From Thalia democratica (taxonomy: Eukaryota), in assembly GCA_965202585.1 (NCBI GenBank), contig OZ241828.1, positions 24,056,001-24,120,000 on the forward strand: a stretch of DNA of 64,000 nt. The letters run 5' to 3'. Numbering within the stretch: the first letter of the stretch is position 1; the number at the start of each line of letters is the position of its first letter. Shown piece after piece: positions 1,039 through 59,887 of this stretch. Both the position numbers and the translations under genes were made by a program. The notes below the pieces were generated by a model that had not been told where the DNA came from, did not search any database, and was given only the letters and a program-made list of their open reading frames with translations.

Positions 1039-1159
1039 TGACGTCATAATTCGAATTAACAAAAGCTTGCTCAAAGTTATACAATAAGTTGAAGCAAAGT
1101 TTATTATATAATTCCAGCTACTACATTTTAAAAATTTGTAGCTGTCTCTAGCAGACGCT
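1039..1159 (+). other. CRE-box/dyad motif-pair unit, family 1
   Basis: TGACGTCA at 1039; taacaaaagcttgc box; GTAGCTGTCT-ctagc-AGAC at 1138 (99 nt downstream). Confidence 0.85.
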
Positions 1160-2128
1160 TTATTGTTACCGTAAATTGGCATTTCATTAATAATTAATAT
1201 TTAAAACTAGCTTTATAAATATATGATTAAATTATTTTTCATCTGACAATGCTATTGAAATGAACCTAGCAATATTGACACCTTTAAAACTTAATACTCT
1301 TAACGAGCTAAGCTCATTTGACATAATCATTTAAATGAAACGTTATTCATATAACTCATTGGACTATATACCTTTCTTTATGAGATATAAGTTGATGCTT
1401 TTTCCTATGAATACCAAATGGTTGAATGATAATTAAATGATTGTGCAATAGTTCATAAGTTATGGTAAGATTTGAATTTAGTATAGACTTTTATCTGAAA
1501 TATATAATAAACTTTAACTTCAACGAGACTTTGCAAACTTCAGGAATCAAAATTATGTCTTTAATTATTTTTTATACAATGTTTTAATTTTTACTTGATT
1601 TACAAAAAAAAAACTAAGTTGTTTAACAAATTCGTAATACTGCTAGCGTAAAATAAACTATAAATGTATTGTTAGAAATTTAAAATAAATAACTTTTATT
1701 TTTGATTTCGTTAGTTTGGTAGATTTATAATTCATATAAGCATAATTTTAGAACATCGTTTAATGCCAAAATCAAAAACTAGAATTTTTTTTTTAACCTT
1801 AAAAATATATGATTTTCTATCATAAAGAGATTCTATGCACGTTTTAAATTGTATAATAGTATTTAATGATTGTCTTTAAAGTAAACAAAATACATAAATA
1901 CATTTATTTAAAGCATTAAGACTATAGAAAAAAAAATATTTAAAATCTAAGGTGATAGTTATTTTTTTTTTATCATTATTATGTTTATTTAAAAAATCTT
2001 ATTTGCTCACTCGACAAGACATAATATAACTTAAGTAAACTATTAGTATTAAGTGAATAATTAAAATGATTATTATAAACTATTTAAGTATGTCTTATTT
2101 TGTTGAAACTACCATTGAAAGCAAATTG

Positions 2129-2245
2129 TGACGCCGTAATAAAAGTACACAAAAACAAGCTAAAAATGTATTATAAAAAAAAGTATTATTATACTAGTGT
2201 CTTGAAGTTTCTATTGGAATTTTGTAGCTGTCTCTGGTAGACAGT
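2129..2245 (+). other. CRE-box/dyad motif-pair unit, family 1
   Basis: TGACGCCG at 2129; acaaaaacaagc box; GTAGCTGTCT-ctggt-AGACAGT at 2224 (95 nt). Confidence 0.85.
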
Positions 2246-3330
2246 AAAAAAGTTACTTTTTAAATTTGCATTATATATAAGAGTTTTGAATTGAAATATT
2301 TTAAAATATTTTTTGTGTATATAAACCAAGTCTGTTTGTTAACAGTTTACTAATTTATTTTTAGAATTTAAAAGCAATAAAAGCCTAGAACCTTTAAAAG
2401 TACATTTAAAACTATAAATGAAAGTATTGATACATTAACCTCTGACTTAAAATTTTAAATTAAGAAAAATAGCTTAAATTTGTAATATACATGAATTTTC
2501 TAGTGAGTTTTTATTTGTTTAGATTTGATCTGTTGTAAGTAAACATCAACTTAGGTATTCCTGAAAATTTGTTTTGTTCGATTAATGTTTCAATTTTGAT
2601 AAGTTTTAATTTTAGTTTGTTTAGCACTGTAGTGTTTAAACTTTCTTTTTATTGTAAAAAGTAAAACAAAATAAGTAATCAATAAGTTTAGTAAAGTTGA
2701 TAAAAAGTTTGTTTAAAATAATTTTACATAAAATCATAACTTAAAACAATAAAAACACTATTAGGTAATATTTAACTATCTGTCTGTGAATGTCTTATCT
2801 AAAACTGTTTGCATTTGTTTAGTAATTTCTAATATGAAAATGCAAAATATTAATGAAAAAAAATTAATTAGTTTTAGTTATACTGTTTACATACTTATTT
2901 AATTTTTAGCTTCTATCCAGTTTATTATTAATTATTTGCTTTATTGTTTGTCTTCATCTGTTAAGTAATTTTGTTTTTATGTTGAAGCAATTTGTATCTG
3001 ATTCGAGTATTAGTTACGCTTTTTTAAGTAAAACAAGTGTATTTTCTTTTTTTAATTTTCAACAATAAGTGGTATTTTGCTTTTTTTTTTTAATTATTTT
3101 ATTATTAAAGAATTTATAGCTTTAAAGTTAAATTACAAATTGTTCTAAACTTACTTAAGTGTTTCGATAAATTCAAAAAAAAAAAATCCATCTTACTTTA
3201 CTATTACTTGATTGTTTATTGAAGTATTTAGTTTAATGTTTCTTAACTAATAAATATATTTATTCAAGTGTTGTTTTTAATTAACGTTCTAGAATGTAGC
3301 TACTAATTTCTTTATTGAAACAAACATATG

Positions 3331-3448
3331 TGACGTTACATTTTAAAGTAACAAAAGCTAGCGTAAAAATACAAAATAAATTAAAAAAGGATTAAGCAAG
3401 TTTATATGAATTATGTTTCAAAGTTTATAGCTGTCTTCAGCAAACAGT
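3331..3448 (+). other. CRE-box/dyad motif-pair unit, family 1
   Basis: TGACGTTA at 3331; aacaaaagctagc box; ATAGCTGTCT-tcagc-AAACAGT at 3427 (96 nt). Confidence 0.85.
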
Positions 3449-4602
3449 AAAGTAATTGTTGAACGAGTTAGCTGGTATATAATGATTGTGTTTTTAAATG
3501 ACGATAATACTTTTCGTTTAGTTTTAGATGTGATAAAACGACATATTAGTTGTTTCTAACTTGAAGTATTTATTTGAATTTAAGTAGCTATTTTAACCGC
3601 TTGCAATGTTCTTGAACTAAAATAAGCAAAATAACAGATGGTACATCAGTTATTTAATGAAATTAACAAAAAATCAGCCTAATATTTCCTTCTATATAAG
3701 ATAAGTAGCGCTATGGAGGTTTGTGTCTATGTTAAATTAATTTATATTTAATTTTAGAGTTTTTTTTTTGTTGAGCTATATTATTTGTTCTTCAAATCAG
3801 TTAATAACATTGTGATGTTAGATTAATTATCGAACTTTTTGATAATTAAGTGGTGTAATGATATTAATATTTAATTTTCTTATTTTTAAGCGTGTGAATA
3901 AATACAGAATTTTGTGTAACAAAAATAATAATGAAAAGCTTTCTCAAAACAATTATACCAATTCCCAAAACAACTCAAGGGAGTTAATTTCATTCCGACG
4001 CGTATATATTTGCGCTTGTCTTTCAAATACGCGTTAGTTGCTTATTTAGTTGCTTACTTCTTCCGCGTTACGATCAAGTTACGATTAAGTTCAACGTTTT
4101 CTTAACAAGTTTTTTAGAAAACGTCTACATCGCAGAGTTAATGTTAGTATTTTATATAACTATACGATTGTTAATACTTTTTATACATTTTATTTTTGTC
4201 GTGATTTAATAGTTTCTTTTTTCAGAATTAAGAATTAATTTTTTTTTTATTCTTTAGATTTATCTATTAGGATATATTCGAAAGATTGTGTGCTACTGAT
4301 ACTTTTAGAATTATTATCAAATACTATTGTTTGTTTAGTTTAATGTTTTACTCAAAAATAAGTAGAATATTTTGGTTAAATAAAACAGAAACCGGCAGGC
4401 AGTTGATAATTAGCAAAAAATTGGAAATCGAAATGTTCGTGTAACTATTAATATTTAATTATAACATATTATATCTAGTGCAAGTTTATAATTTTTACCA
4501 GATTCTACCTAAAACTTATTTTTACTCTTCATTTAAAATTTCAGAATAACTAACTAAAAATTTCAAATTTTTTATGTTCAGGAATCTTCCTAATTGACTA
4601 CC

Positions 4603-4617: not shown

Positions 4618-5687
4618 CATTAAAAAATACGGAAAAAGTATATTTTATATAGTTTAGAAATTTACAGCTAATTCCTTACATTAAATATAAGCTTTTTCCT
4701 TTCATAAAAAAATCTTTTAATATTAAGTATTGCTAGATTTTCATCAATTTGATAATACAGCAAAAAGTGAACGAAAGCAAAGAGTTTTGTCACAATTAAG
4801 GGTTGTGAGTTTATAATTTTCTTACATAATTCTATTTTGTCATTAAAGGATTGACGAATTATTTTAATTAAGCAACTGGCATCTAGTGACATTTGAATTT
4901 TGTAAAATAGTATTAATTAAGATATAGAAATAAAACTATATATTTATAAATTATCAAAAATAGCTTAAAAATATATTATAAAGTTAAGAAGCATTCTATA
5001 GTTTTCTGCCCGACTGACTCTACAAGTTTGTAGCTGCAGCAGATATTGAATTAGACTTCTGAAAATTCTATCCGTAAACTTTTATTTATTGTTACTTTAA
5101 AATAACTTTCGTAATTATAAGATCAAATTAATCAATAACGATAGAATGGCTAGTTACAACGTCGTTTATGATTACTATATCTAGCAAAACAAAGGAAGTA
5201 ACTTTACATCAATATTTTAGCTTTTCAGTTTATCGTTCTTACGAAACGTTTCTACTCAGTTGTTTGTAATATGTTGGTAATATGAACCCTATGTAGTAAA
5301 TATAACACAATATTTATATAAAATTAAAACTTCTCTACACTAATTTTAACTGCAATTGCTATTATTTTTTAATTAAGTTATAAATAAATTTGTTTAGTTT
5401 TTTTTTTTTATAATAAGGCTTACTTCAAAATTAAAAACATAAGTTATATATCACTTTAAAAGAGTATGATTGACATACTTAAACTTTTATTTTCTTAGCT
5501 AAGCAGGCTGTAAAAACCTAGGAAGAATCATTTTACAACGTCTTTAATACAAGTAATTCTTTCTTTTTTGAAACTTAGTCATTGAGTTTAAGAAATCTTA
5601 AAAGAATTGTGCTTAATTTGTACTTGTTTCGTTTTCATTAAAGATAGATAAATAAAAAAAAAAATATTAAATAATACCTAAGAAAAG

Positions 5688-8892: not shown

Positions 8893-9457
8893 GAGACACT
8901 GCTAGTGTATAAAAAAATGCGTTTAAAAAGTATTTCTAATTAAAGTACTAAAGGTAGCATAATTTTGCACTTTCATTGATATACAGTAACATTTAATAAG
9001 TAAATATTGCTATTGGTAGATTAAAAGAAAATTTATAAAATAAACTTAAATACAATTAGTTATTGTAAGTACTCATAAAAAAAAAACAAGGTTCAATTAT
9101 TTGTTTTAAATAAGTGCATGTAAATTTAAAATTTTACTTCTAAACTTCCGACAACTTAAACTAATATAATTATGATTCAGTAATTATTATACCGTAAAAA
9201 AAAGCTTGAAAAATAAAGATCTTGCCATCATAATTAAATAAATCAACATAAAAAAATTTGTAATTATTTTAATTGAATTTTTATATATGGCTATGAGAAA
9301 GTTTAAAATTTTTGGAAATTATACTACTTTCAATTAATTTTAGTTGTATTTTTTTTTTAATCTCGGTATCTCGATATTTTTAATCTTGGATATAAATATT
9401 TTCTTATCCAGAATTCTACTACTAAGTTTAGTAAAATACTTGAGGTATATATAAATT

Positions 9458-9584
9458 AGGCATTTTGCCATGCCTTTAAAAATTAATTAGATTTTGAGAG
9501 AAGCAAACTAGGGGTTTTAGAAATTTTTAAAATTTAAACAAGAATCTTTTTCTATTTATTGTGTGCGAAAAGCGAATGACGTCA
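9458..9584 (-). other. CRE-box/dyad motif-pair unit, family 3
   Basis: TGACGTCA at 9577-9584; minus-strand cacaataaatag box; perfect stem AGGCAT-N6-ATGCCT at 9458-9475 (109 nt). Confidence 0.8.
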
Positions 9585-16625: not shown

Positions 16626-17343
16626 GAATTGAACTAAAAAAAAAAATTGTGCGACATAAATTTTACAGTAATACAGTTAGGTTGTTTAAATTTAAAAAAC
16701 TTAAAAAATAAGAAAAATGATTTATTGATTAAAATTAATAAGAAAAAACACCTTAATTTTTTTTTAATCGTCATAGTTTTGTTAAAAATCTCTATTACTC
16801 TTTTCGATTAATTTCTAGTTCTCTTAAAAAGACAGTATAAATTTAAATTAAAACATTTACAATATTAAGTTGAAAAAAAGTAAAGCAAACAGTTTAAAAA
16901 ATTTAAGCTCATTAGCTAATATAGTTTTAAACCTATTTTTTAACACTTAGTTCAAGATAATACATTGGATTAAATTACAAAATAACTACTATTTAAATTT
17001 GAAAGTTTTTGTCAAACTTTAGATAACTATTCAAACGTGGTTATTTTGCACAAAGTTGTTTCACAATTTGTTCATCAAAAATTAAAAAAACATTACATAA
17101 TAAAAATTGTGTTTTTGTATTACCTATTATTTTATTTTTCATTATAAGCGTTAAATTTTTATATAAAGAAAAAATATTTTTTATAAAAAATAAAAAATTA
17201 AATATATTCATAATTTTTGAACGGTTTTACACTGACTGATTGGTACAATCATATAAGCTTCATTATAAGTTTTAATCAGTTTATTTTGTTTCTGACCGAA
17301 ATCAATATATTAGATAATAGTTATTTTTTGCTAAAGTATAACG

Positions 17344-17463
17344 TGACGCAATAATTTATAATAACAAAAACTAGCTAAGAAGTAAAATTATTAATAAAAA
17401 AAGCTATATTGTTTTTAAAGAGGATAGTTTTTCTGAAGTTTTCTGACGTCTCTACCAGTCAGT
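17344..17463 (+). other. CRE-box/dyad motif-pair unit, family 1
   Basis: TGACGCAA at 17344; aataacaaaaactagc box; variant dyad CTGAC-gtctctacca-GTCAGT at 17443 (about 98 nt). Confidence 0.75.
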
Positions 17464-18361
17464 ATTTTAAATTTTCAATAAATACCTGTAATAAAAAAAT
17501 TGTTTTATTTAGGAATGTTTTACTCACATTAAATTTATATACATCTACGTATACGCCATTGTAAAAAAAATATTTTAATATATTTAAATTTTTAATATTC
17601 AATGGTAATCTGTTATTCGAAATAACTAACCCTGATCGCTTTTTAAGTGTTTTTTTATTACGAAGTATTTCATTGAACCTTTTTAAAACGTGGTGATTTT
17701 TTTTTGTAAAAAATTAGTTCTCTAAAAAAAATTAGCTACTGAAAAGTAATACCCTGCTGATAAAAATAAATTTTGAACAAATTGATAACTACGATGGTTA
17801 AGCAAACTACAAAAAAAAAAAAAGCTTAAATTATTCTTGTAAATAAAAGTAGCTTTTCTACTATTCCTGAAGTAATTTTTTTGTCGCTGTTTTAAGCAAA
17901 CAGTATTTAATTCTTCTTGATGTTACGAATGTTTTGTTCAAACTTGTTTCAACAGTTCTTGTTTCATTCAGTGTTTGTATGTTTATTAACTTAATTTATA
18001 TAGTTTGTGCTTTAGGGTATTTTTTTTTAAATACTTCCTTGGCTATTATTAAAGGTTCCCGTAATTCAAAGGTTATGTGTAAATTTATATTTGATTTAAG
18101 TAATTTTGGTATTCAAGCTTCTTTATAGAATTAAAGTGATTAAAAAGTAAGTGAAATATAACTTAGGGTCCTAAAAAGTTCTCTAGATTTTTTTTTCAAG
18201 TCACAGTTAATATGAAAAATAAACACTTAAAATCCCTTGAATTTTTTTGTTTTGATTATTTATATCTCGAACTGTTAAATATTTGCATTTAAAGTTAAAA
18301 GTTTTAGAAATAATAAAAACGTATTAATTTCTAATGAATTATTTACAAAAAAAAAACTATG

Positions 18362-18480
18362 TGACGTCAGAATTTATTGTACTAAACTGTAGCGCAAAAT
18401 TTAAATGTAAATTAAAATTTCATTCTTTTCAATTCCTAAATCACACAAATGAAAGTTTTTAGCTGTTTTCAACGAAGAGT
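18362..18480 (+). other. CRE-box/dyad motif-pair unit, family 1
   Basis: TGACGTCA at 18362; actaaactgtagcg box; TTAGCTGTTT-tcaac-GAAGAGT at 18459 (97 nt). Confidence 0.8.
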
Positions 18481-19363
18481 AAATTTTATTCGTTTTTAGT
18501 TGGCAATATCGCAACCTTACGGGCGATTAATGTTATCAGGAGGCGTTAAATAATAAGGCGACGAAAAGATTAATGGGTAATTAACTACTAAGAAGCGACA
18601 TCAGATAAATAGGGTAACTATTTTTAAAGATTTCCAAGTGTGTACCTAGTTACAACAAAATATAAGTTTATGAAACCAAGAAATAAACAAGTCACTAAAG
18701 GTATTTAATTATCGGCTCTGTTAATTCTTTTGCAACAATAAGGTTACTGTTTGGTTTCTGCCTTTAGTCAAAAAATTTTTGAAACTTAAAAAAAAAATTT
18801 GTAGTTGAAAAAGCTTTTAGCTCAGAAATAGATATCTTAAATAAAATATCAAACTTTTACTTACACAGTAAGAAACTCAAGCTTTACTTACCTTATTAAA
18901 ACCAAACATATGACTTTTAGCTAGTAGTCGTCATGGTCATCCTTTACATTAAAACTCAGATCAGACAAAATGTTTCGTTAGTTATGAATTAAACTTCTAT
19001 AAATAATTTTTACTAGTAATTTAATAAGTTCGGCTAACAATTATTATCATTTTAGTTTGTTGGCTTGTATGTTTAGCTGGCTTATAACTAGATAAAAACA
19101 TTTTACCAAAAAAATAGTTTTTATAACGACGTAATAAGTTCTACATTACTTAAAAGCTAATTATTACTGTTAATAAATATTAAATTGTCTTTTGTTAAGA
19201 TTCATAGAATTAATAGAATAATATGTATCAATTTTGTGAAGTGACTTTTAGTATTTTATACAATGTAAATACTAAATTACTGCATTAATGTATATTAATA
19301 TAACTAATAGTTTCTTAGAAAGATCTAAAACATTGAATATAAAACTAAATAAAATTCATGTTG

Positions 19364-19477
19364 TGACGTCAAGATTTAAACTAAGAAAAACATTTTGAAA
19401 AGTTCATATAAATTTTACTAAAGCTATACAGTATCCCACGATTCATACATACGAAGTTTCTGCTACAAGCAGACAGT
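19364..19477 (+). other. CRE-box/dyad motif-pair unit, family 1
   Basis: TGACGTCA at 19364; gtttCTGCTacaagcAGACAGTAA ending at 19477 (about 92 nt). Confidence 0.7.
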
Positions 19478-19973
19478 AATTTATTTACTTAGAGGATTTA
19501 ACGTTTTTCAATGGTAAATTTTTAATTATTGTATATAACTCAGTTTTCATAATACATAAACCCAATTTATCGGTTGTAATATGAAAATAATGAAAATGGT
19601 AATAGTCATATGATACTTAAATACAAAGTTTAAACAAAGTTTGTTTAAAACTTTCGTTCATAAATTTTTATTTATTATCTATGTAGTTACTTAAATTCAA
19701 CTGAATGTAAGTTTTAAACTTTGCTATGTTCAATTTTTATTTGCTTACGCAAAAAATGTTTTTTTTTTTTTTAATTTTTCTTGTTTCGTTAAGGTTTCTT
19801 ATTATTAATGTTTAGCAAATTCAATTGTCGATTCGAAATCATTTTATATGAGATTTTATTATTTAAAATAAATATTTAAGTAACTAGTTATCTTAAGTAT
19901 ATTTTTGGTTTTACACATAGTTTTTTTTTATAAATTTCTTAATACATATCAAAAAAACACTTGATCACTAAAT

Positions 19974-20490: not shown

Positions 20491-20713
20491 TGACGTCAAA
20501 AGCGTTTTACATAAAAAATAAATTATATTTGAGTATATAAGTAAATTTTTAATCATTAACAAAATCTTAAGGACTTGCAAAGGTCCTAGTTGAATCTTAA
20601 ATTGCTTGTAAACATGTATTTAAATTTTTTTTTACTAATGCACTCTACAAATGATTAATTCCAATGAAAATTCAAAGTAAAAATTAAATTTTAAAGGGCA
20701 CTTCAAAGCGCCT
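20491..20713 (+). other. CRE-box/dyad motif-pair unit, family 3 (long spacer)
   Basis: TGACGTCA at 20491 flanked by the inverted repeat gtaaaacgc / gcgttttac; GGGCAC-ttcaaa-GCGCCT at 20696. Confidence 0.65.
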
Positions 20714-21374
20714 TAAAGTATACTCAACTGATTAAAAATATTATTCTAAGCTTATGGTTTTTCAATATATAAGAGCTTCGTTTACTTTTTTGTTCTTTTA
20801 ATTAGATTTTTATTCAAAATGAAAAATAAACAAAATAAAAGAAATAAGAAAACTCAATGTTTTCAAGTTTTAGCCGAATTGACACAAATAATTTTGAAAT
20901 ACAACATTTAAATTCATAGTTTAAAGCTTAAGTAGCCGAATTATTAGCATCTTCTTTCGAACCAAATGTCTAAAAAAAATTTTCAAAGGTTTCACTTGTA
21001 ATTTTACTTTTTATAATAACGCTGAAGTGTATAGTGAGTTTTTTTTTCAAATTTCCTGTAAATTGTTCTTCGAATCTTTTCTTACTCTTCATTTCAAACC
21101 CAGCAGTATCTAATGTAAATTAGAAAGTTTTCTTTTTCGACCCAAATTTGTATGTTCACAGTCTGTAAGTTTGCCGATCCCTCAATAAAACTATAGAAAA
21201 ATAGAGCTATGTGTTATATTGCAGCTAAACGTTCAATTAAATTCAAAATAGTTTCATTTTTTAGTCACTTTTATTAGTCAGTATTAACATTTTTTAATAA
21301 GGAAGCACGATCAAAATTTAACAACTTGTATAAATTCAAGAAGTTTAATATAATTATAAATTTAAAGAAAACTA

Positions 21375-21477
21375 TGGACTCACAAACGCTAGCTGAAAAG
21401 TTTACGATTAATTAAAATAATACCTTACATATTTCTCCTTTAAGTTTGCTTAATTTTGTAACCGTCTCTGTGACAGT
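21375..21477 (+). other. CRE-box/dyad motif-pair unit, family 1
   Basis: TGGACTCA at 21375; acaaacgctagc box; GTAACCGTCT-ctgt-GACAGTAA at 21458 (83 nt). Confidence 0.65.
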
Positions 21478-23268: not shown

Positions 23269-23383
23269 TGATGTCAGAATTCAAAATAACAGAAATAAGA
23301 TTAAAATTATTTTATAAATATCTAAAAAAAAAATTAGTTGCACCAATATGTGTTATAGTTTGTAGCAGTCTTAAGCTGACAGT
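23269..23383 (+). other. CRE-box/dyad motif-pair unit, family 1
   Basis: TGATGTCA at 23269; aataacagaaataag box; GTAGCAGTCT-taagc-TGACAGTA at 23362 (93 nt). Confidence 0.8.
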
Positions 23384-34526: not shown

Positions 34527-34644
34527 ACTGTCTGCTGGAGACCGTTAAAAACTTTAACTTTTAAAACACTTAAATTTAGTAAAAAGCTTTTTCAATTTAA
34601 AAATTATTTTAAGCTAGTTTTTGTTTATTAACATTTTAACGTCA
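34527..34644 (-). other. CRE-box/dyad motif-pair unit, family 1
   Basis: Minus strand: TGACGTTA; aaacaaaaactagc box; TTAACGGTCT-ccagc-AGACAGTA (96 nt). Confidence 0.85.
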
Positions 34645-38590: not shown

Positions 38591-38599
38591 TTTTACAGC

Positions 38600-48060: not shown

Positions 48061-49578
48061 TCCAAAACAACAAAAAAAAAATAATAAATGTAAAGAAAAA
48101 AATTGAAACACTATAAAGATAAAAAAAAATCACTGGTCACTAGCTAGTTATTACTATAAACCAACTTAAAATATTATACTTTTAATAAGTATATCTATTA
48201 AATTTAAAATAATATTATACTTCATACTTAACTTTATTAACGTTGAACTGATAAAGTGATGGTAAAATTTTAATAAAAGTATAAACTTTATTACCTTAAA
48301 AATTTTTTTTTTTGCTTTTGATATCTGATGATGAAAAAAATTGTTGAAATTTTAAAGTTGATTTCGCTCAATCAAAATTTTTGTAGTTTATAAACTATGC
48401 TATAATGTGTCGTTTAATTATTCAGAAAAAAATGTATGAAACGTTAAACGAGCTTGTATTTAAAACGATTGTATTTCCAGAAATAACAAAATCTCAAACT
48501 TCGTAACAATAGTGTTAAAATACCGTGTTATGAAAAATTTCGTTAAAGCTCAACTTTCTAAATAAAATTTTATGTTTTGTAAATAAGTTTAAACTATTAG
48601 GTATTTCAGTCTACAATTAGTTTCATCATAAACTTTAATAAAGTACTAAAAACCCAAAATGCTGCTTTGATATAATAAAAGCATTTAAAATGATTTAAGT
48701 TACTTAAACTTCGAACTTAACGAGTTGCTTTTATTGCTAATTTCATTTTAATGAAAATAAATTAGATGTATAACACACTGTTTTTCTTAATCTTAATTTA
48801 TAAAAGTTAAAAAAAAATATGCAGTAAAAAATTTTATACAACTTGTAGCTTTGTGATCGTTGCTACTAAAAACAAAGTTTATGTATAGTTAAATTGAAGT
48901 TTTAACACTAATACAGTAAGTCTTTTACACAATTAGACTCACCAAACTTAAACTTGACCTTAAGCTGTTATTAAGTTTAGTATTTTATATCATTTTTTTT
49001 TCTTCTATTAGAAGACAAAGTTCTAAGTTTGAAAATGCTATTTTCTTTTATCTAATAACTTTTAGTAAGTTTTTGTTTGTTTTAATTATAACGTCCCATT
49101 TACTATTCCATTTTATACTTCGTTAAGAATTTTTTGTTTAATATAATAACAGCATATAAAGTATAACTTTAATAAACTTTTCTATCTATTAAAAACCTTT
49201 GTTTTAAATATATAAATTACTTTAAATTTACTGTTTCCTACCTGGAGTTTAAATTAAAATGAAAAGGTATTTACAAAAAATAAGCTAGAATTTTAGGTGT
49301 TTATAAAATTAATAAAGTTTACGGTAAAATTTAAAATTCAGTAAGTAAAATATCATTCAACAGTACATAAGAACTATAAAGTGATAAAAATGTTTTTGAA
49401 TTTTTGTAGTAAGTATTTAGCACTGATGTTTATTTTAAGTTAGTTTTGAATATTAAAATAAAATAAGTGCGCCAAATAGACTTTTCTGTAAGCGATTCGT
49501 ATAAAAGCGGAATAGTAGAAAGCTCGCAACTGCTGGAGTTACCTATATGCTGAAACAACCTTTATCAGTAGTTTATCA

Positions 49579-49698
49579 ACAGTCTGCTTCAGACATCTAT
49601 AAACTTCAAACACAACATTTGAAAGGTTTCCATGTAATTAAATTTTATTAATTATAACTTTTTGTAGTAGTTGATGTTAAATTTAATGCATGACGCCA
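49579..49698 (-). other. CRE-box/dyad motif-pair unit, family 1
   Basis: Minus strand: TGGCGTCA; taacatcaactac box; ATAGATGTCT-gaagc-AGACTGT (98 nt). Confidence 0.8.
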
Positions 49699-50335
49699 CG
49701 TGTGATTAAGTTATTTAATACTTTATTACAAATACTTCATATGCAAAAGGTTACATATGATAAACAACTATGATGCTTCCTTTAATAGGTAACCTGTATA
49801 ATTGTTATAGGTTGTGAAGTGTCGCTAATTGGGAGATTGTGCTTATATATAAATACTGGCCTAGTCAATAATACAACGTAAACTTTAACTTATGTAAGAG
49901 ACAATCTTAAGTTAGCTAATTACTATATTTATTTAATAATTGAAAATGAATTACTTAGTTTTAACTAAGTGTTTTAATAGATTACTTGTTATACGGCTAA
50001 CTTAATTGGACAAAATATGTTTTTAAAATAAAATATGTAAAAATATATTATAATAGAATTCTATACAACATAAAATATCATTTAAACAAGACATTACTTT
50101 TTTTAAAAGACTAATTTACTTAAATCAAAGAAGCTGAACACAAAAAGTTTTCGTTTAAAGTAAACTCATCGAACAAACCAAAAGAAAACTGACCGTTTGC
50201 TTTTTACAAGATGTGATTTAAACAAATTCATAAATTTGGCTAGAAGTTAGCTGCTAAGGATGCAACAAAAAAAATACAAACTCGACTACAAATTATAAAA
50301 CTAATAATTTTAAAATTAATCAAAGTGAATCTATC

Positions 50336-50449: not shown

Positions 50450-50768
50450 AATTTAAATGTTCGAAATTGTTTAATTTTTCATGCGTGGCTCTAATTAACA
50501 TGAATATTCATTTACACTTTTTAGTTTCAGTAAGTTTTTCAAGTATAAAAAACATTTTTGTGACAAAATATTAAAATATAATTAAGCAATATAACTAGCT
50601 GGCATAAATAGTTTTAAGAATTGAAATAAAAATTTAAGTTTTTGTTGAACATATAGTTTGTACTTTATATGCAAGTTTTCAAAAAGCTTCAACTTATTGT
50701 ATAGCAATATAGTCAGCTTGTTAGAATTTTTTCAAGGTAAATTTGATTTTTAGGTAAACCGAGAACTA

Positions 50769-50878
50769 TGATGATAAAAAAAAAGAAATCAAGCCTAATT
50801 TTTTATAAATTAAAGTGGCTTTGCCAGGAGTTTTCACTATTCTGTCAATTTAATTTTTAGCTGTTTTAAGTAGACAGT
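50769..50878 (+). other. CRE-box/dyad motif-pair unit, family 1
   Basis: TGATGATA at 50769; aagaaatcaagc box; TTAGCTGTTT-taagt-AGACAGTA at 50857 (88 nt). Confidence 0.7.
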
Positions 50879-51143
50879 ATTAAAATTCAATGTAAAAGTT
50901 TGTAAAATCAAGTTGATACTCCACTTTTAAATTCTTTAAAGTTTATCAAAAAAAAAATTTAAGTTATTTATATTAAATACTTGTTTCTTATAAAAGTGCT
51001 TTATTTTAGAGAATTTTATTTTTACTTTTTAAAGTATATAAAAGCAATTAATACTTGCTTTTATCTTATGTAATTATTAAAATAGAATTAAGAATGTTAA
51101 AAATGTAAAGTTTAAATATTTAAATTTAATTAAATATATAAAA

Positions 51144-51252: not shown

Positions 51253-52914
51253 AACTTAGATTCTCTAAATGTTTGATTTATTTTTAATTTTTTATATTTT
51301 ACATGATAGTTTAAACTATTGTTTAACTTACTGTAAATTTTTTTTTTTAAATTTTCTTGTTAAAATGAAGAAAAAGTAATCAATCTGTAATTAATAATGA
51401 TGTAAAGTATTATAGTCTTATTTAATTTATAGATTAAATTATTTTTTGTTCCAATGTCAAATTTACCATACAAGTTAAGTTTTACTTTTTAACTTGTTTT
51501 TATGTATAGTTTATTAGATATTTGTTAAGTTGTTTTTTTGTAGAGTAAATTAGATATTTGTTAAGTTTTCTTCAAAATACATTTGTACATTGAAAAGTAT
51601 AATTTCTTTTTAGATAGATATTTATATTTCCTTAAGTTTTTACAACAGTTATAGTTATGAGAATAAGCAATCATATTTGGTTAATAACAAATAATAGATA
51701 TGTTTTTTTTTAATTAATTTAATCACAAACTAAAAAAGTTTACAGATGTTATAAACGTATAGTATGACTTACAGTTTTTTTTTTATACTCGTGTTCATTC
51801 TTATTTATATATTTAAAGATGAGACATATGTTTTTCTTTTTCACTGCATTTATACGACTTTTCCCTTTTTATGTTATTATGAAACTTGGTTTAGTTTTTT
51901 CGTTTTTTTGTAAAAGATCAACAAGAAAAATGTTAACGTACATGATTGTAAAAGTCAAAATCTAGGGAAGGAGAGGGTGTAGTGCTTATGGCACACTATG
52001 GTTTCCATAGTCAATATTGGTAGAAATAGGTATAAAAAAAAAAGGCACACCATTTTTTTTCGTTTAAAGATAATCTAGTTTTGAATTTATTTAAATAGTA
52101 ATACTTTGAAAAAAAAAATTAAGTAATAATGTTGATTTTTTGTTTATCTTGAGTTTATTAATTAGTTTAATTAAAACTGCTCAAAATAAAAAAATTATGG
52201 TGTGAGGCTCGATGACCGAAAGGTCTTTTTCTAAAACCAATCCTATGACCATAGTTGTGACTGTGAGCGTTCACATTTTTCTTTCTTTTCCTTTTTTATT
52301 TCTTACTTTAGTATTATTTCAATAAAAAATTAATGTTAATTTTTAGATAAAGGTCTACATTCAAAATTGAGCTTAATACCTCAGTTTTGTAACTGTAGTG
52401 TTTTTTTAAATCGTGGTTTGAACTATTTAATTCTCATTACAATAGTAAAAAGAGTAAAGTTTAAAAAACTAATTCACAAAAGTTGTGATCTTTATAAAGT
52501 TTACTGATATAAGTATTAAATATATATATAATATACACTGTAACTCAGGATTTCCTATTCCTTTACGTTAACAAAAGCAGCACGATACATGAATTAATTC
52601 TTTCGAAAATTTATTTAACAAACTAAGTTTCGGTCAAAGACCTCGTTAGTAAAAATAAATCTAAAAAGGATATGTGACAGTCATGGAAAATAGCATATAA
52701 TCATTAAAATTACTATAAAACCAAATTGAATTGATTTTAATGTAGCTTATTTAAATTGTGACGTAATTATTCAAAATTTAAACAATCTTGTGCTTTTAAT
52801 CGCTATGAAAATTTGAAATCTCGCTCAAATACAGCACGATATATTTTAAGCAGTTAGCAGTTAATGAACATTAAAAAAAAAACATAGTAAAGTATAAATT
52901 AAATTAAACGTATG

Positions 52915-53034
52915 TGACATCAGAATTTATAAACTAACAAAAACTAGCTAAACATTAAAAAATAAATTTGAGTAAAACATTTTGGATTCTTTAACTTTGT
53001 TCATGAAAAGTTTTTAACTGTCTAATAGTTACGT
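52915..53034 (+). other. CRE-box/dyad motif-pair unit, family 1
   Basis: TGACATCA at 52915; taacaaaaactagc box; TTAACTGTCT-aatag-TTACGTAA at 53014 (99 nt). Confidence 0.8.
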
Positions 53035-53748
53035 AAAATAGCTAGTGATATCAGTTTGCCATTTTAATAGATATTTTGACTTTAAATGTTTTATACACAA
53101 AGTAATATATTATTACTACTATTAGTTTAATTATCAGCAAAAACACAAATAAATACAGAAAGAGAATTGGTGTAATATATGTGAAACAAAAAAACTAAAA
53201 CTTGAAAAGAAAAGTAGATATTTAAATAAAGTACGAGTCATAAAATTGTTGTTTGAGTTATTGACAAACACTACTACGAAGAATATTTATGAATTCTGTC
53301 TTAGATTGTTGTTGTATGTTATTATAAGTTTTATTTATTTGTTAATTTAATTTAAAGAAATCAAAAACGTTTATTCAGAACAACTTCGTGTATAAAAAAT
53401 ATTTATAGGACTTTTTTTAAAACTTTATTTTTTCTTAAGTTTAGCAAAATAATAAATAAATCAAAATTTTAAAAACGTGTTGACTTAGGGGAGTTATGTA
53501 ATTTAGATTTTAGTATAAGTCATCAAATGCTATAATTTTTTTTTTTTATACATTGAACTAATTTCATAAGATTTACTCAATAAAAACTCATAGGGTGTGA
53601 AACGTTAAAAATATATTTAAGTTTAGGGATTTTTCGTGTAATGATTGACGCATAGTTAAATAAAACACAATGTATTTTAAGCAATATGTTAGAAACTGAT
53701 GTTATTCTCTAAAATTTTCTACTAAAACAAGTATTAACTAAAAATATA

Positions 53749-53867
53749 TAACGTCATAACTAAAACCAACAAAATTTATTTCGATATTTAGAAAATAAAA
53801 TAAATTAGAATTAAAAACATTCTTCAGTAATAATTTCTAAAGTTTCTAGCAGTCTTCAAAAGCGAGT
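53749..53867 (+). other. CRE-box/dyad motif-pair unit, family 1
   Basis: TAACGTCA at 53749; accaacaaaa box; CTAGCAGTCT-tcaaa-AGCGAGTAA at 53846 (97 nt). Confidence 0.75.
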
Positions 53868-54313
53868 AAATTATTTATTTAAATTATTAACTAGCTTAAT
53901 AAATATTTAGGTTTTGAAATATTTTCTATATTTTAAAACCAAAGTAAACGTTTTTAGTTACACCAGTTTATTAATTTAATGAAAATATCAATAACAACTT
54001 TACTTGTAAAGTTAAGGTTAAAAGTAAATTCAATACTAATGACACATAACAATTAAAAAACTAACTTAAACCCTTCTTATAATTTAGAATTAGTGGCTTT
54101 CATCGGCGTAGCGTAGGAAGGGAAACTAACGCTAATGTGCACCGAAGAATGATGAAAACAAGAAAGTTTAGAATGTACTCCTTTCCAATTTAAGCATTTA
54201 ATTTCTCTACTTATTTTTTTTTTTAACTGTGTATATGTACTATTAAAAAATTAAACGAACTTTTTGGATACCAAATATTCATAACCGTTGCGCAGAAAAA
54301 ATTGTGTATCGGC

Positions 54314-55907: not shown

Positions 55908-56041
55908 TGACGTCACAGGAGTTTTACACACAGAAACTTAATCAAGTTTGAGTATAAAAAGAGATGTATTGTTTAAATGATAAGTTTTAAAATAAAAGTT
56001 ATCAATCGATATAAAATTTTAAAAGGCACTGCAAAGTGCCT
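55908..56041 (+). other. CRE-box/dyad motif-pair unit, family 3
   Basis: TGACGTCA at 55908; cacagaaacttaa box; perfect stem AGGCAC-tgcaaa-GTGCCT at 56024 (116 nt). Confidence 0.8.
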
Positions 56042-56417
56042 AAAAGTGTACTTAACTACTAGAAAATATTATTTTCTCATTTTCGTTTTCTTTTTCAATA
56101 TATAAACTTTGTTATTCTTTAAATTATTGTTTTAAGAACACAAAAGAAGACTTTACAAAACTGTGTTAAAATAACAGAAAATGCGAAAATTCGAAGTTTA
56201 AAAGTTTTAGCAGAATCAACACAAACAAGATTAATGGTCATGCAGCACTCAAACTTATAGTTTAATAAATTAATTAGTTGAGTTATTAACATCTTCCTTC
56301 GGGCAAAAATTCATTGATCTCCAGTCATGTCAAGATAAAATATTCGAAGGCTTTAGTTGTAGTTTTTAATTTTTATAACAAAGCTAAAGCAACTAGTAAA
56401 AATTTATAAGTTTTACC

Positions 56418-57701: not shown

Positions 57702-58498
57702 TATGTAAAGAATTTTAAATGGTTTGAGTTTTATTATGTGTTGCTATTGCTACTTTAACTTTTATTAGATGTTTGACTATGAAAAATATAATATTAGTTT
57801 TACGATTCTAAAAGTCTAAGTCATTAAGAATCTGGAAATAATAGTTCCATATAACGACGAAGTTTTTGAAAACTATCGATTAACTGTCTGTCAACTATCC
57901 TTCGAGAAAGAATAATTAAATTTTACTTAATGTTTCTTTAAATTATAATTGTTTTAGAGCTATGTTTTATGAGTTCTAAAAATCAAATCACATAGCTTTT
58001 TTCATTTAGTGTTGAAAAAAAAATCATTTTTGATCATAAGATATATAAAAATTTTATTTTAACCCATGTCGCCTGATTTAAGAAACGAACAAAAATTATT
58101 TAAAAAAGTAGAAATTTTGTATAAATACTATGATAAAGTAGAAACTAAAAGTTTACAAACTATATAAAGCGTTTTCAATTATTGAGTGTATTATAAAAAG
58201 CAATTTAATTTTAAATGACAACATTAAACTAAATAAGTTCGATACACTTATTTATGACTATTTTCAAAATATTTTTGCAAAATTATCTTAGTTTTTTATG
58301 TAAGTCTTCATCCAAAAAATGAAAAAAAAAATGTAATGTTAATTTATAACATTTGATAGAACCTAGTTATTTATATATAAACCTAGTAAGCTAAATTTTT
58401 AAACTATATTTCTAATAATAGTTTTACAAAGAAAAACTTTACACTTAAAGTATAAACCATAAACGAGGCTTGAGCAGAGAGTTATAACTTAATACCTT

Positions 58499-58621
58499 TG
58501 TCGTTAAAAAATATAACAAAAGCTTGCTTATTCAATTTCTACATTTTTAGCCGTTTAGCAGTTTTGTGGAATTTCTTAACACGATTATGAAGCAACTTTT
58601 TAGCTGTCTAAAACAGACAGT
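58499..58621 (+). other. CRE-box/dyad motif-pair unit, family 1
   Basis: TGTCGTTA at 58499; taacaaaagcttgc box (identical to the unit at 1039); TTAGCTGTCT-aaaac-AGACAGTA at 58600 (101 nt). Confidence 0.85.
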
Positions 58622-59222
58622 AGTTTATTTTAATTTTGATGAGATAACGGATTAAATTTTTTAAAACTTTAAGGTACGCATTTCTTGTAGATATAAACTT
58701 TAGCCTCAGGTCAAGGAGCGTACCTTGATGTCCCTACTGTATTAATTGCTTGTTGTCGAAATTGAAATTAAAATAAAATATTAGTATGCACAGTTTTTAA
58801 ACATTAGTTTTAATAAAGAAAAATATTGTTGTTTTTTTAATATCTAAATTAAACAATTGGTTAATCATTGAATAGTACAGCTAATAAAATTGAAAATTTG
58901 ATTAGTATGTAAATACCATAACAAAAAAATTTAACAAACTAAAAGTTTTAAATATTTCTATTAAATTAAACTTTAGTTTTAGAACGTCCTTGGTTTAAGC
59001 TTTGACAATTTTTGGGTGTTTTCTACAAATAATATTTGATTGTTTTTTCAATAAAAAAAATAAAAGTAAAGCCTTTGTATAATTTTTTAACTCATAGTTC
59101 ATTTGAATTAGTCAATTTTATTTTTGTTGCTTGCTAACTTAAAAAGCACGGTAAAATTTTAGTAAACAAAATAATCATCTGTAAAATCAAAAAAATCAAA
59201 ATTTATTGTTATTTAAGATACG

Positions 59223-59340
59223 TGGTGTCATTATTCATACCAACAAAAACTTGTTCAAAAATATACAATAAATTATAGTAGCATCGTGTAACCTTATGTA
59301 TTTCACCTTTGGAAGCTTGTAGCTGTCTTTAGCAGAAAGT
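59223..59340 (+). other. CRE-box/dyad motif-pair unit, family 1
   Basis: TGGTGTCA at 59223; caacaaaaacttgt box; GTAGCTGTCT-ttagc-AGAAAGTAA at 59319 (96 nt). Confidence 0.85.
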
Positions 59341-59768
59341 AAATAAGTAACTTTATTATAATTGATAAAAAAACAATTTGTACGTTATTTTTTTCTGGTA
59401 AACAACTTAAAAAAAACGCTTTCTTTATTAAAGTATTCTTATAAGTAAATTTTTACATATCTTCATAAAACTGTGTTTAGTTGTTTAACACAGCAAAATA
59501 CATATTAGTTCAATAAACATAAAGTTCAATTTTTTTAGTTATAACTAATTGTATTAATATTAAAATACGAAATATTAAGATAAAAAAAATTGTTTAAGTG
59601 TTTCACTATCTCCTAGAAAGAGCTAAAAACGTTGCAAGATAAAATAGCAAACCATAGGCAAGTACATTAGAAGTTTTTTCAAAATTATTAATCTGAAGAA
59701 GGTGACTGTGATTTAAATATTTATAACTAAATATCTATGCGAGAGCAAATTCATAAGATAATTTATTT

Positions 59769-59887
59769 GCTGTTTACTGAAGACAGCTACAAAATTTGAT
59801 AATGACATTGATGAAACTATAGAGAAAGCTTCTTTAATTTATATTATAAAAATGAGTTAGTTTGTTTTAGTATATGTTAATACGTCA
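59769..59887 (-). other. CRE-box/dyad motif-pair unit, family 1
   Basis: Minus strand: TGACGTAT; actaaaacaaactaac box; GTAGCTGTCT-tcagt-AAACAGC (97 nt). Confidence 0.85.

What the first reader, a model, noticed from the sequence alone, without database searches (positions are those of the whole stretch)
1039..59887. Window-wide array of ~28 fixed-spacing motif pairs (CRE-like box + A-rich box ... ~96 nt ... CTGTCT-N5-AGACAG dyad)
Seen: the same layout recurs on both strands: TGACGTCA-like octamer, ~10-14 nt, an aacaaaaactagc-like box, an AT-rich spacer, then aagtttGTAGCTGTCT-N5-AGACAGTAA. The CRE-to-dyad distance is 83-113 nt, and 88-101 nt in 22 of 28 units. Spacers and flanks show no obvious similarity between units. 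Dyads without a recognisable CRE occur near 5030, 30215, 33624, 35404 and 57078. I count 11 perfect TGACGTCA sites across all families, against about 0.25 expected at ~23% GC. Established: TGACGTCA is the CREB/ATF site, and snRNA-type genes use an upstream element at a fixed distance from the start site. Inference: motifs and spacing that persist while the rest diverges suggest selection. The best-fitting model is a cluster of small-RNA transcription units (bipartite promoter plus a short 5' hairpin RNA, analogous to snRNA/SL-RNA variants or motif-driven piRNA loci). Alternatives are a spaced protein-binding or recombination signal, or an old non-autonomous rolling-circle element.
Basis: partly seen in the sequence, partly recalled or inferred. 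Interest (0 to 1): 0.88.

Follow-up and report, generated by a model that had tools for sequence, protein, structure and literature searches.

The report
Cluster of promoter-plus-hairpin mini-units
A gene-poor 64-kb stretch of a salp-like tunicate genome holds about 25 copies of a 140-base unit that looks like a tiny RNA gene (promoter-like block, 30-base unique stretch of fixed length, constant hairpin block), but no RNA data could be obtained to show that it is transcribed.

Summary
A profile built from 9 units finds 24 copies (E<1e-3) on both strands, and block-wise shuffles give nothing above 6.7 bits. Each unit has three parts:
- a conserved ~60-nt block (GTGACGTCAT, 11 nt, AACAAAAACTAGC, ATAAAT at +45, AAAGTAGC);
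- a ~30-nt hypervariable stretch of fixed length, with a weak TTTCA about 26 nt after ATAAAT;
- a conserved AAGTTTGTAG-CTGTCT-N5-AGACAG-TAAAT..TTACTT block.

Flanks are unrelated. There are no TSDs, TIRs, ORFs or Rfam hits. Units lie in same-strand runs (4 runs in 24 units, p=0.0003).

Two other families in the window share the CRE-to-TATA offset (43-46 nt) but carry different hairpins. One has a GCAA loop and three compensatory pairs. The family-1 dyad shows no covariation.

Best reading (~0.5): independently promoted small-RNA genes, each giving a unique ~15-nt 5' end joined to a constant U-rich-plus-hairpin tail. The layout resembles U7 or a guide RNA.

The scan met this before on other DNA of the same genome (s1-287052, s1-311106) and read it the same way; that is not independent evidence.

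The parts
1034..1176 (+). family-1 unit with a perfect CRE at 1039-1046; the 3' arm of the dyad is degenerate
   Evidence: nhmmer E=1e-25; sequence
2124..2265 (+). family-1 reference unit: CRE-like 2129-2136, A-box 2145-2160, TATA-like block 2167-2186, Inr-like 2197-2202, variable 2203-2216, U-rich 2217-2226, dyad 2228-2244, tail 2246-2260
   Evidence: E=4.1e-24; block coordinates; perfect dyad
3327..3468 (+). family-1 unit
   Evidence: E=4.5e-25; blocks
4938..5067 (+). family-1 unit with a degenerate CRE and a 4-nt deletion in the dyad
   Evidence: E=2.8e-10
17337..17483 (+). family-1 unit, diverged; its hairpin is shifted (CTGAC..GTCAG)
   Evidence: E=7.9e-08
17795..17922 (+). family-1 unit without a CRE; the dyad CTGTTT/AAACAG carries a compensatory C-G to U-A change
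   Evidence: E=1.4e-05
18358..18500 (+). family-1 unit with a perfect CRE at 18362 and a degenerate dyad
   Evidence: E=1.7e-05
19359..19494 (+). family-1 unit with a perfect CRE at 19364 and a 4-nt deletion before the dyad
   Evidence: E=2.5e-07
21368..21503 (+). family-1 unit whose CRE is not recognisable
   Evidence: E=1.1e-07
23265..23403 (+). family-1 unit
   Evidence: E=4.7e-18
28582..28690 (+). family-1 unit, scaffold half only, with a perfect dyad at 28653-28669
   Evidence: E=1.4e-06
29429..29567 (-). family-1 unit
   Evidence: E=1.7e-06
31874..32032 (-). family-1 unit with a 12-nt insertion after the TATA-like box
   Evidence: E=5.5e-22
32741..32884 (-). family-1 reference unit: CRE-like 32880-32873, A-box 32864-32849, TATA-like block 32840-32821, GTTTCA 32809-32804, variable 32803-32790, U-rich 32789-32780, dyad 32778-32762, tail 32760-32746
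   Evidence: E=8.9e-28
33904..33982 (-). family-1 scaffold half only
   Evidence: E=4e-4
34509..34650 (-). family-1 unit
   Evidence: E=3e-15
49007..49100 (-). family-1 promoter half only
   Evidence: E=3.6e-06
49559..49702 (-). family-1 unit
   Evidence: E=1.4e-08
50768..50898 (+). family-1 unit whose CRE is not recognisable
   Evidence: E=9.5e-07
52911..53044 (+). family-1 unit whose 3' dyad arm is lost
   Evidence: E=3.1e-09
53745..53888 (+). family-1 unit
   Evidence: E=3.9e-09
58492..58641 (+). family-1 unit with a perfect dyad at 58604-58620
   Evidence: E=8.9e-19
59219..59360 (+). family-1 unit, the best-scoring one
   Evidence: E=2.3e-28
59749..59891 (-). family-1 unit, convergent with the previous unit; the two dyads lie about 470 nt apart
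   Evidence: E=7.7e-25
55908..56045 (+). family-3 unit: perfect CRE, GTTTTACACAC box, TATAAAA at +45, then AAAATTTTAAA followed by the hairpin AGGCACT-GCAA-AGTGCCT
20491..20590 (+). family-3 unit; its hairpin AGGACTT-GCAA-AGGTCCT carries two compensatory pairs
28890..29001 (-). family-3 unit
9444..9584 (-). family-3 unit; its hairpin GGCAT..ATGCC carries a compensatory pair
25454..25585 (+). family-2 unit: perfect CRE, TATAAAT at +45, TTTTCCA at about +76, then AAATTTTAAAA followed by a hairpin AGTCGTTG-AAAA-TAACGGCT. Close copies (CRE positions): 27495, 23989, 26075, 37699.

Best explanation
Each unit is an independently promoted gene for a short non-coding RNA. The cluster grew by local head-to-tail duplication.

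SHOWN
- A ~60-nt conserved upstream block is followed by a ~30-nt stretch that is saturated with substitutions yet keeps its length. A ~45-nt conserved block follows that.
- Three families share the same CRE-to-TATA offset but carry three different hairpins.

INFERRED
- The upstream block is a compact promoter. It would comprise an ATF/CREB-type site at about -75, the A-box AACAAAAACTAGC at about -55 (the position of an snRNA proximal element), ATAAAT at about -30, and a weak TTTCA initiator.
- Transcription would start about 26-30 nt after ATAAAT.
- The RNA would then begin with about 14-17 nt unique to each unit. A constant tail would follow: the U-rich tract AAGUUUGUAG, the 6-7-bp hairpin CUGUCU-N5-AGACAG, and UAAAU..UUACUU.
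- That layout is the one seen in U7 snRNA and other Sm-class RNAs (single-stranded antisense 5' end, U-rich protein site, terminal hairpin) and in guide RNAs generally.
- The constant tail would bind a protein, and the unique 5' end would choose a target by base pairing.

NOT DETERMINED
- The polymerase.
- The RNA ends.
- The protein partner.
- The targets.
For: 1. The units are far beyond chance: 24 hits at E<1e-3 against none in shuffles.
2. Conservation is block-wise. Fifteen units not used to build the profile match the training consensus at 0.65-0.82 over columns 4-63. They match at 0.79-0.83 over AAGTTTGTAG and the dyad arms, but only at 0.41-0.55 over columns 64-93.
3. Spacing is held although the spacer sequence is saturated. 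CRE to A-box is 19 nt in 15 of 17 units. ATAAAT to TTTC is 26+/-1 nt in 18 of 23, and TTTC to AAGTTT is 20 nt in 16 of 22. Duplicates in the same window that are probably neutral show 0.10-0.17 gap openings per mismatch, so several indels per pair would be expected without constraint.
4. A TATA-like word lies 43-46 nt after the CRE in families 1, 2 and 3: 13 hits fall in that 10-nt bin against about 2 per 5 nt elsewhere. In all three families a U/A-rich tract sits directly 5' of a short hairpin.
5. The family-3 hairpin has an invariant GCAA (GNRA-type) loop and 3 pairs changed on both sides. It also has G.U pairs on the strand that reads CRE to hairpin, and 92.9% of cells pair against 80.2% in shuffles (14 of 500 shuffles reach this).
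6. The units are not mobile-element-like. Flanks are not alignable and there is no TSD or TIR signal.
7. The units are not coding, because stop codons occur throughout.
8. Same-strand runs (4 runs in 24 units, p=0.0003) and units as close as 441-600 nt, including a convergent pair whose dyads lie about 470 nt apart, fit an array of short genes better than long transcripts.
Against: - There is no expression evidence at all.
- The family-1 dyad shows no covariation. It pairs in 82.8% of cells against 82.7% in shuffles, so it could equally be a palindromic DNA site.
- There is no Rfam family on any unit, even at E<=10.
- There is no positioned T-run terminator. The first TTTT after the dyad lies at a median of 29 nt, against a background of 33 nt.
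- The 'initiator' is weak (0.55 identity in held-out units), so the start site is a guess.
- The U-rich tract AAGUUUGUAG departs from the canonical Sm site (from my knowledge: RAU3-6GR). Such words are also common in a genome with 24% GC.
- Many units have lost the CRE or a dyad arm, so part of the array may be dead.
- The variable 16-mers have no complementary partner inside the window, and no target is known.
Confidence: 0.5

Rival explanations
1. The units are promoter modules for longer, non-conserved transcripts such as lncRNAs or piRNA-precursor-like RNAs. On this reading the block from AAGTTTGTAG to the dyad is a downstream core-promoter or pausing element, or a palindromic transcription-factor site at about +18 to +45. 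Its job would be at the DNA level or in the nascent 5' leader, not as the body of a short stable RNA.
For: The promoter-like geometry is the same as in the best explanation. The family-1 dyad does not covary, as expected for a sequence-specific binding site. GTCT/AGAC and (T/A)GACAG resemble SMAD and TALE-homeodomain half-sites (from my knowledge, not tested here). Conservation stops about 20 nt after the dyad, and there is no positioned terminator.
Against: Neighbouring units lie only 441-870 nt apart in many cases, and two of them converge with their dyads about 470 nt apart, which leaves little room for long transcripts. Families 2 and 3 place different hairpins at the equivalent position. 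The family-3 hairpin covaries and uses G.U pairs, which points to RNA pairing rather than to one DNA-binding factor. Nothing downstream is conserved or coding.
Confidence: 0.22
2. The units are spliced-leader-type genes. The RNA would start after the TATA-like box, and its mini-exon would end at ...AGCAGACA. The nearly invariant GT that follows (GTAAAT) would be a splice donor held at the base of the hairpin, as in SL RNAs, and the mini-exon would be trans-spliced onto mRNAs.
For: The G and T after AGACA are among the few columns conserved in at least 90% of units. GTAAAT is a good AT-rich donor (from my knowledge). Tunicates are known to trans-splice (from my knowledge; PMC1488885 appeared in the list but I did not open it). 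A promoter followed by a short exon, with the donor inside a stem, is the SL-RNA layout (from my knowledge).
Against: The 5' part of the would-be leader is hypervariable, whereas known leaders are conserved at the 5' end (from my knowledge). No conserved Sm site follows the donor. Families 2 and 3 have no conserved GT after their hairpins.
Confidence: 0.08
3. The units are decayed copies of a repeat (a non-autonomous transposon, a Helitron end, a solo LTR or an old tandem repeat) with no present function. On this reading the blocks only appear conserved because the profile selects for them.
For: Many copies are degenerate: some have lost the CRE, some a dyad arm, and some survive only as half units. 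Hits were chosen with a profile that weights the conserved columns, which inflates the contrast between blocks. The window also holds ordinary repeats and duplications.
Against: There are no TSDs or TIRs above the cross-unit control. Flanks and the inner 30 nt are unalignable while both blocks stay at about 80% identity, and lengths are kept despite a local indel rate of 0.10-0.17 per mismatch. The hairpin is followed by TAAAT, not by the CTRR end of Helitrons (from my knowledge). The strong strand runs fit tandem duplication rather than transposition. A retroposed RNA would not carry its upstream promoter along.
Confidence: 0.08
4. The units are spaced DNA signals for recombination, DNA elimination or replication. 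Two conserved blocks separated by a spacer of fixed length would then work like heptamer-spacer-nonamer signals, or like recombinase core sites with a dyad.
For: A spacer of fixed length and free sequence lies between conserved blocks. The dyad has 6-nt arms and a 5-nt centre.
Against: The ATAAAT and initiator geometry, shared with two other families, is what a promoter needs and is not needed for recombination. The family-3 hairpin covaries with G.U pairs. No recombinase or transposase gene lies in the window. I know of no report of programmed rearrangement in salps.
Confidence: 0.04

Closest known systems
snRNA-type gene promoters (Pol II U1-U5/U7 and Pol III type 3 such as U6 and 7SK: proximal sequence element near -55, with or without a TATA box near -30, plus an upstream enhancer)
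   Same: The promoter is compact and external, with fixed spacing. A conserved box (AACAAAAACTAGC) lies where a PSE would be, about 26 nt upstream of a TATA-like ATAAAT. An enhancer-type site (CRE) lies further upstream. The genes are short, multicopy and clustered.
   Different: The CRE sits only about 20 nt upstream of the A-box, not about 150 nt away as a distal element does. The A-box has not been shown to be this animal's PSE, because no bona fide snRNA gene was available for comparison. There is no positioned T-run and no recognisable 3' box.
U7 snRNA (57-71 nt: antisense 5' end, the special Sm site AAUUUGUCUAG, a terminal hairpin)
   Same: The predicted order of parts is the same: a single-stranded 5' segment of about 15-20 nt, a U-rich tract (AAGUUUGUAG), a hairpin directly after it, and a total length of roughly 55-65 nt.
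   Different: The 5' segment differs in every unit, whereas in U7 it is a conserved histone-downstream-element complement. The stem is only 6-7 bp. The Rfam U7 model and all other Rfam models give no match. There are dozens of copies per cluster rather than a few genes.
Caenorhabditis elegans type-I piRNA (21U-RNA) loci with the upstream Ruby motif
   Same: Many tiny, autonomous transcription units lie on both strands of gene-poor clusters. Each has the same upstream motif at a fixed distance and a unique transcribed sequence.
   Different: The upstream sequence is different and much longer (about 60 nt). A constant hairpin block follows the unique segment, which 21U loci lack. Units are about 1 kb apart (median 1165 nt), not tens to hundreds of nt.
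Spliced-leader RNA genes (nematodes, flatworms, tunicates)
   Same: Both have an snRNA-like promoter, a short first segment, a GT that sits at the base of a stem, and a multicopy arrangement.
   Different: The would-be leader is hypervariable at its 5' end. There is no conserved Sm site after the GT. The genes are not arranged in a regular tandem repeat. The Ciona-type leader is not part of the unit.
Helitron 3' ends and MITEs
   Same: Both have a short hairpin near one edge of a conserved stretch and many copies in AT-rich DNA.
   Different: There are no TSDs or TIRs and no CTRR after the hairpin. A hypervariable core of fixed length sits between the two conserved blocks. The units lie in same-strand local arrays.

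Membership tests
snRNA-type promoter (PSE +/- TATA) | A TATA-like box lies at a fixed distance downstream of a conserved proximal box | tested here: met
   A-box to ATAAAT is 26+/-1 nt in 18 of 22 units. ATAAAT lies 43-46 nt after the CRE in three families.
snRNA-type promoter (PSE +/- TATA) | The proximal box is the same element that precedes this species' own U1, U2, U4, U5 and U6 genes (the SNAPc site) | not testable with these tools
   There is no snRNA gene in the window, and I had no access to the rest of the assembly.
snRNA-type promoter (PSE +/- TATA) | A defined 3' end signal: a T-run for Pol III or a 3' box for Pol II | tested here: inconclusive
   The first TTTT lies a median of 29 nt after the dyad, against a background of 33 nt. 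A moderately conserved tail TAAAT..TTACTT(T) exists (0.63 identity in held-out units), but its role is unknown.
U7 / Sm-class snRNA | Match to the family's covariance model | tested here: not met
   No unit gives an Rfam hit at gathering score or at E<=10.
U7 / Sm-class snRNA | A U-rich Sm-type site lies directly 5' of a terminal hairpin | tested here: inconclusive
   AAGTTTGTAG is conserved (0.79 in held-out units) and abuts the dyad. Families 2 and 3 have AAATTTTAAAA and AATTTTTAAA before their hairpins. These tracts depart from RAU3-6GR, and such words are common at 24% GC.
U7 / Sm-class snRNA | The hairpin is maintained by compensatory change | tested here: not met
   In family 1, 82.8% of cells pair against 82.7% in shuffles, and 1 pair is changed on both sides. 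In family 3 the feature is met: 3 pairs, with 14 of 500 shuffles reaching the observed value.
Spliced-leader RNA gene | A conserved leader sequence at the 5' end of the RNA | tested here: not met
   The segment between the predicted start and AAGTTTG matches the consensus at 0.41, which is about chance level.
Spliced-leader RNA gene | A GT donor after the leader and an Sm site downstream of it | tested here: inconclusive
   The GT after AGACA is conserved in at least 90% of units. No conserved Sm-like word follows it.
Motif-dependent piRNA loci (C. elegans type I) | An upstream motif at a fixed distance from a unique small-RNA 5' end, with 21-nt 5'-U RNAs mapped to each unit | not testable with these tools
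MITE / Helitron / solo LTR | Defined termini with TSDs or TIRs (or a 5'-TC ... hairpin-CTRR-3' structure), and divergence that is uniform along the element | tested here: not met
   The longest shared word between a unit's own left and right flanks averages 5.56 nt, against 5.49 for cross-unit pairs. The TIR-like measure is 5.38 against 5.66. Conservation is block-wise, and the flanks are unrelated.

The most novel reading that the evidence does not exclude
This tunicate may carry hundreds of genes, in several clusters, for U7-like or Sm-class mini-RNAs that share a constant protein-binding tail and each carry a different ~15-nt 5' guide. That would be a programmable RNA-guided system in a chordate, for example guided 3'-end cleavage, splicing control or silencing. 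At least three scaffold families (three different hairpins) would be driven by one promoter design.
Probability: 0.15. Interest if true: 0.92.

Novelty: new variant of a known kind. Interest (0 to 1): 0.7.

Why it matters
If the units are transcribed, they are a large, previously undescribed family of small RNA genes in the sister group of vertebrates. Their design (unique front, constant hairpin tail, own promoter) is the design of guide RNAs. Motif-driven arrays of autonomous mini-genes are so far known chiefly from nematode piRNAs. The shared promoter plan would also define the small-RNA promoter of thaliaceans, which is useful for annotation and for expression tools. It would also give a promoter-type role to the TGACGTCA word, which earlier scan notes report as oddly abundant throughout this genome. 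Even if the units act only as DNA, a ~60-nt block and a ~45-nt block kept at fixed distance across about 25 otherwise unrelated sites is a constraint that needs an explanation.

Tried and rejected
- RNA evidence: two run searches found only runs that hold 80-92% of this non-coding stretch (probably DNA of the same sample) and a second organism label holding 22% of the words. No reads were laid, and I did not resend.
- Other copies elsewhere: a metagenome scan for GTAGCTGTCT-N5-AGACAGTAA gave two unrelated chance hits in GC-richer contigs.
- Rfam: searches at gathering score and at E<=10 gave nothing on any unit.
- Coding reading: in frame the block reads KFVAVxSRQ-stop, but stop codons lie upstream in every unit and even inside the loop. 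Rejected.
- A second helix between the variable stretch and GTAGCTG: folds of four units suggested it, but pairing with a unit's own upstream stretch is no better than with other units' upstream stretches (4.05 against 3.91 nt, p=0.27). Rejected.
- A Pol III terminator at a fixed place: not seen.
- Conserved elements further downstream: none within 900 nt.
- Targets of the variable 16-mers inside the window: none beyond shuffled controls (12 against 11.2).
- Literature: searches on salp genomes, tunicate snRNA promoters, U7, SL RNA and TGACGTCA found nothing that describes these units.
- Pfam: scans of the few ORFs in the window gave no informative match.

Full report
CONTEXT

The window has 24% GC. 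It has almost no open reading frames: one ORF of at least 120 aa and ten of at least 75 aa, none with an informative Pfam match. It has no tRNA genes and no Rfam match. Earlier notes of this scan identify the genome as a pelagic tunicate, probably a salp; I did not test that. The window is therefore gene-poor DNA of an AT-rich animal genome.

OBSERVATION

- TGACGTCA occurs 11 times against 0.24 expected.
- CTGTCT-N5-AGACAG with up to 1 mismatch occurs 11 times against 0.02 expected.
- Aligning the nine best units shows a common layout of about 140 nt with unrelated flanks.
- A profile built from these nine finds 24 hits at E<1e-3 and 30 at E<0.05, on both strands. Ten block-wise dinucleotide shuffles give a best score of 6.7 bits, whereas all 24 real hits score at least 16 bits.
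- A profile-free count agrees: 40 loose dyads against 4.0 in shuffles, 33 near-CREs against 8.3, and 7 dyads with a near-CRE 80-115 nt upstream against 0.0.

Two details need correction. Only 3 of the 11 perfect CREs belong to this family. The upstream half is also conserved almost throughout, not only in two boxes.

ANATOMY OF THE FAMILY-1 UNIT

- Block 1, about 60 nt: (TAy)GTGACGTCAT, then 11 nt, then AACAAAAACTAGCT.AAAA, then TATA.AATAAAT, then TAAAGTAGC.
- Variable stretch, about 30 nt. A weak (G/A)TTTC(A) sits in its middle, 26+/-1 nt after ATAAAT in 18 of 23 units.
- Block 2: AAGTTTGTAG, then CTGTCT-nnAGC-AGACAG, then TAAAT.A.TTACTT.

Fifteen units that were not used to build the profile match the training consensus as follows:
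- 0.65-0.82 across block 1
- 0.79-0.83 across AAGTTTGTAG and the dyad arms
- 0.63 in the tail
- 0.41-0.55 in the variable stretch, which is about what AT-rich random sequence gives

Lengths are nevertheless kept:
- CRE to A-box is 19 nt in 15 of 17 units.
- ATAAAT to AAGTTT is 46-47 nt in 15 of 21.
- TTTC to AAGTTT is 20 nt in 16 of 22.
- A-box to dyad is 81-84 nt in 13 of 21.

Duplicated segments in the same window that are probably neutral show 0.10-0.17 gap openings per mismatch. A saturated 30-nt stretch should therefore have changed length several times between any two units. It has not, and that is the strongest sequence-level sign of constraint.

WHAT THE UNIT IS NOT

- Not coding. The tempting frame KFVAVxSRQ-stop is interrupted by stop codons upstream in every unit.
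- Not a recent repeat. Self-comparison finds no pair of family-1 units at E<1e-5, and nothing within 900 nt downstream is shared.
- No target-site duplications or terminal inverted repeats appear above the cross-unit control.
- No known RNA family matches, even at E<=10.
- A second helix, suggested by single-sequence folds, fails a permutation test (p=0.27).

ARRANGEMENT

The 24 units form only 4 same-strand runs (16 plus, 8 minus; p=0.0003). The median distance between neighbours is 1165 nt and the smallest is 441 nt. One convergent pair has dyads about 470 nt apart. This is the pattern of an array that grew by local head-to-tail duplication and then diverged everywhere except in the two blocks. 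It also leaves little room for long transcripts.

TWO MORE FAMILIES WITH THE SAME PLAN

Family 3 has four copies, with CREs at 9577-, 20491+, 28994- and 55908+.
- It has TGACGTCA, a GCGTTTTACACAC box and TATAAAA/TATATAA/TATAGAT at +43 to +45.
- After a stretch of variable sequence and variable length come AAAATTTTTAAA and the hairpin AGGCACT-GCAA-AGTGCCT.
- The loop is an invariant GNRA-type tetraloop.
- Three of the seven pairs change on both sides, and two G.U pairs occur on the strand that reads from CRE to hairpin.
- Pairing is 92.9% against 80.2% in shuffles; 14 of 500 shuffles reach this.
- With four sequences this is suggestive, not conclusive. It does favour pairing in an RNA of that strand.

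Family 2 has CREs at 25454, 27495, 23989, 26075 and 37699.
- Two of the five copies (25454, 27495) have TATAAAT at +45 and TTTTCCA near +76; the other three lack a clear TATA word there.
- All five have AAATTTTAAAA and a different hairpin, AGTCGTTG-AAAA-TAACGGCT. In one copy the hairpin pairs are kept through G.U.

Across all near-CRE sites, TATA-like words pile up 40-49 nt downstream: 13 hits in that 10-nt bin against about 2 per 5-nt bin elsewhere. One promoter-like design is therefore joined to at least three different 'U/A-rich tract plus hairpin' modules. A single DNA-binding factor does not easily explain that; a class of small-RNA genes does.

WEAK POINTS

- The family-1 dyad does not covary. 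It pairs in 82.8% of cells against 82.7% in shuffles, with one pair changed on both sides. Its loop is partly conserved as well (nnAGC). It may be read as sequence, either in RNA or in DNA.
- There is no positioned T-run.
- The initiator is weak.
- No transcription could be shown. The runs found hold 80-92% of this non-coding stretch and are probably DNA of the assembled sample.

MOST LIKELY MECHANISM (inference)

Block 1 is a compact promoter, with the CRE near -75, the A-box near -55 and ATAAAT near -30. Transcription starts near the TTTCA. The RNA carries about 14-17 unit-specific nucleotides, then the constant tail of U-rich tract, hairpin and short 3' extension.

This is the order of parts in U7 snRNA and in guide RNAs generally. 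The constant tail would hold a protein, and the unique head would select a target. I put about 0.5 on 'independently promoted small-RNA genes' in general, and less on the U7-like guide version in particular.

Rivals:
- promoters of longer non-coding transcripts with a DNA-level or leader-level downstream element (0.22)
- an SL-RNA-like donor; the GT after AGACA is conserved in at least 90% of units, but the would-be leader is hypervariable (0.08)
- decayed repeats (0.08)
- recombination-type signals (0.04)

RELATION TO EARLIER SCAN NOTES (AI notes, not independent evidence)

- s1-287052 describes about 30 'stem-loop plus CRE-like site at ~98 bp' modules on another piece of this genome. Its follow-up reached the same reading, also without RNA data.
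- s1-311106 notes about 17 such elements 6.1 Mb before this window's start.
- s1-311474 notes the family-2 duplication, which I confirm as 23939-26016 against 26015-28053 at 92.5% identity.
- Several notes say that TGACGTCA is strongly enriched in coding exons of this genome. If that is true, the word is used genome-wide, and its presence alone does not define these units.
- s1-301107 reports the usual tunicate spliced leader in this genome, which lowers the SL reading.

NOVELTY

I found no description of these units in the papers searched. On present evidence they are a new variant of a known kind, namely clustered small-RNA genes with an external promoter. If the guide-RNA reading is confirmed, they would be something new for chordates.

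Noticed in passing
window 9444-9584 (-), 20491-20590 (+), 28890-29001 (-), 55908-56045 (+): A separate 'family 3' has a perfect TGACGTCA, a GCGTTTTACACAC box, a TATA box at +43 to +45, and a 7-bp hairpin with an invariant GCAA tetraloop that shows three compensatory pairs. In the copy at 20491 the CRE sits in the middle of a longer palindrome (GTAAAACGC ... GCGTTTTAC).
   Followed up: partly
window 23939-28053, also 37497-38602 and 12011-12143: A tandem duplication of about 2 kb (92.5% identity) carries 'family 2' units (CRE, TATAAAT, AAATTTTAAAA followed by the GTCGTT..AACGGC hairpin). Older copies, about 73% identical, lie at 37.5-38.6 kb, and a fragment lies at 12.0 kb.
   Followed up: partly
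window 5775-8561: An array of a 27-nt unit (about 103 copies, 68% matches) contains short stop-free stretches that read as repeats like MQEIQPTSG. Whether it is a coding repeat or a satellite was not determined.
   Followed up: no
window 38627-40477 versus 43685-41574: An inverted duplication of about 1.9 kb (81% identity) flanks a segment that holds the window's only sizeable ORFs (42729-43116, both strands). Neither ORF has a Pfam match.
   Followed up: no
window 61068-61260 and 62626-62801: Two short arrays of a GC-rich 41-45-nt unit (ATCCGGTTCCGGCCGGATTCTAATTT-A(n)-GTCCGG) contain a CCGG-rich palindrome. They lie in a local duplication (61010-61249 versus 62568-62801, 90% identity).
   Followed up: no
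window 14231-14300 (+): A lone perfect TGACGTCA is followed at +24 by AACAGAAAAGCTGTAAC, which resembles the family-1 A-box, but no dyad follows. It may be a promoter-half remnant.
   Followed up: no
family-1 CRE column, all units: Only 3 of 17 alignable family-1 CREs are perfect. Some of the variants are CpG transitions (TGATGTCA, TGACATCA, TGGTGTCA), which would fit decay of a methylated CpG in part of the array.
   Followed up: no
   Followed up: no
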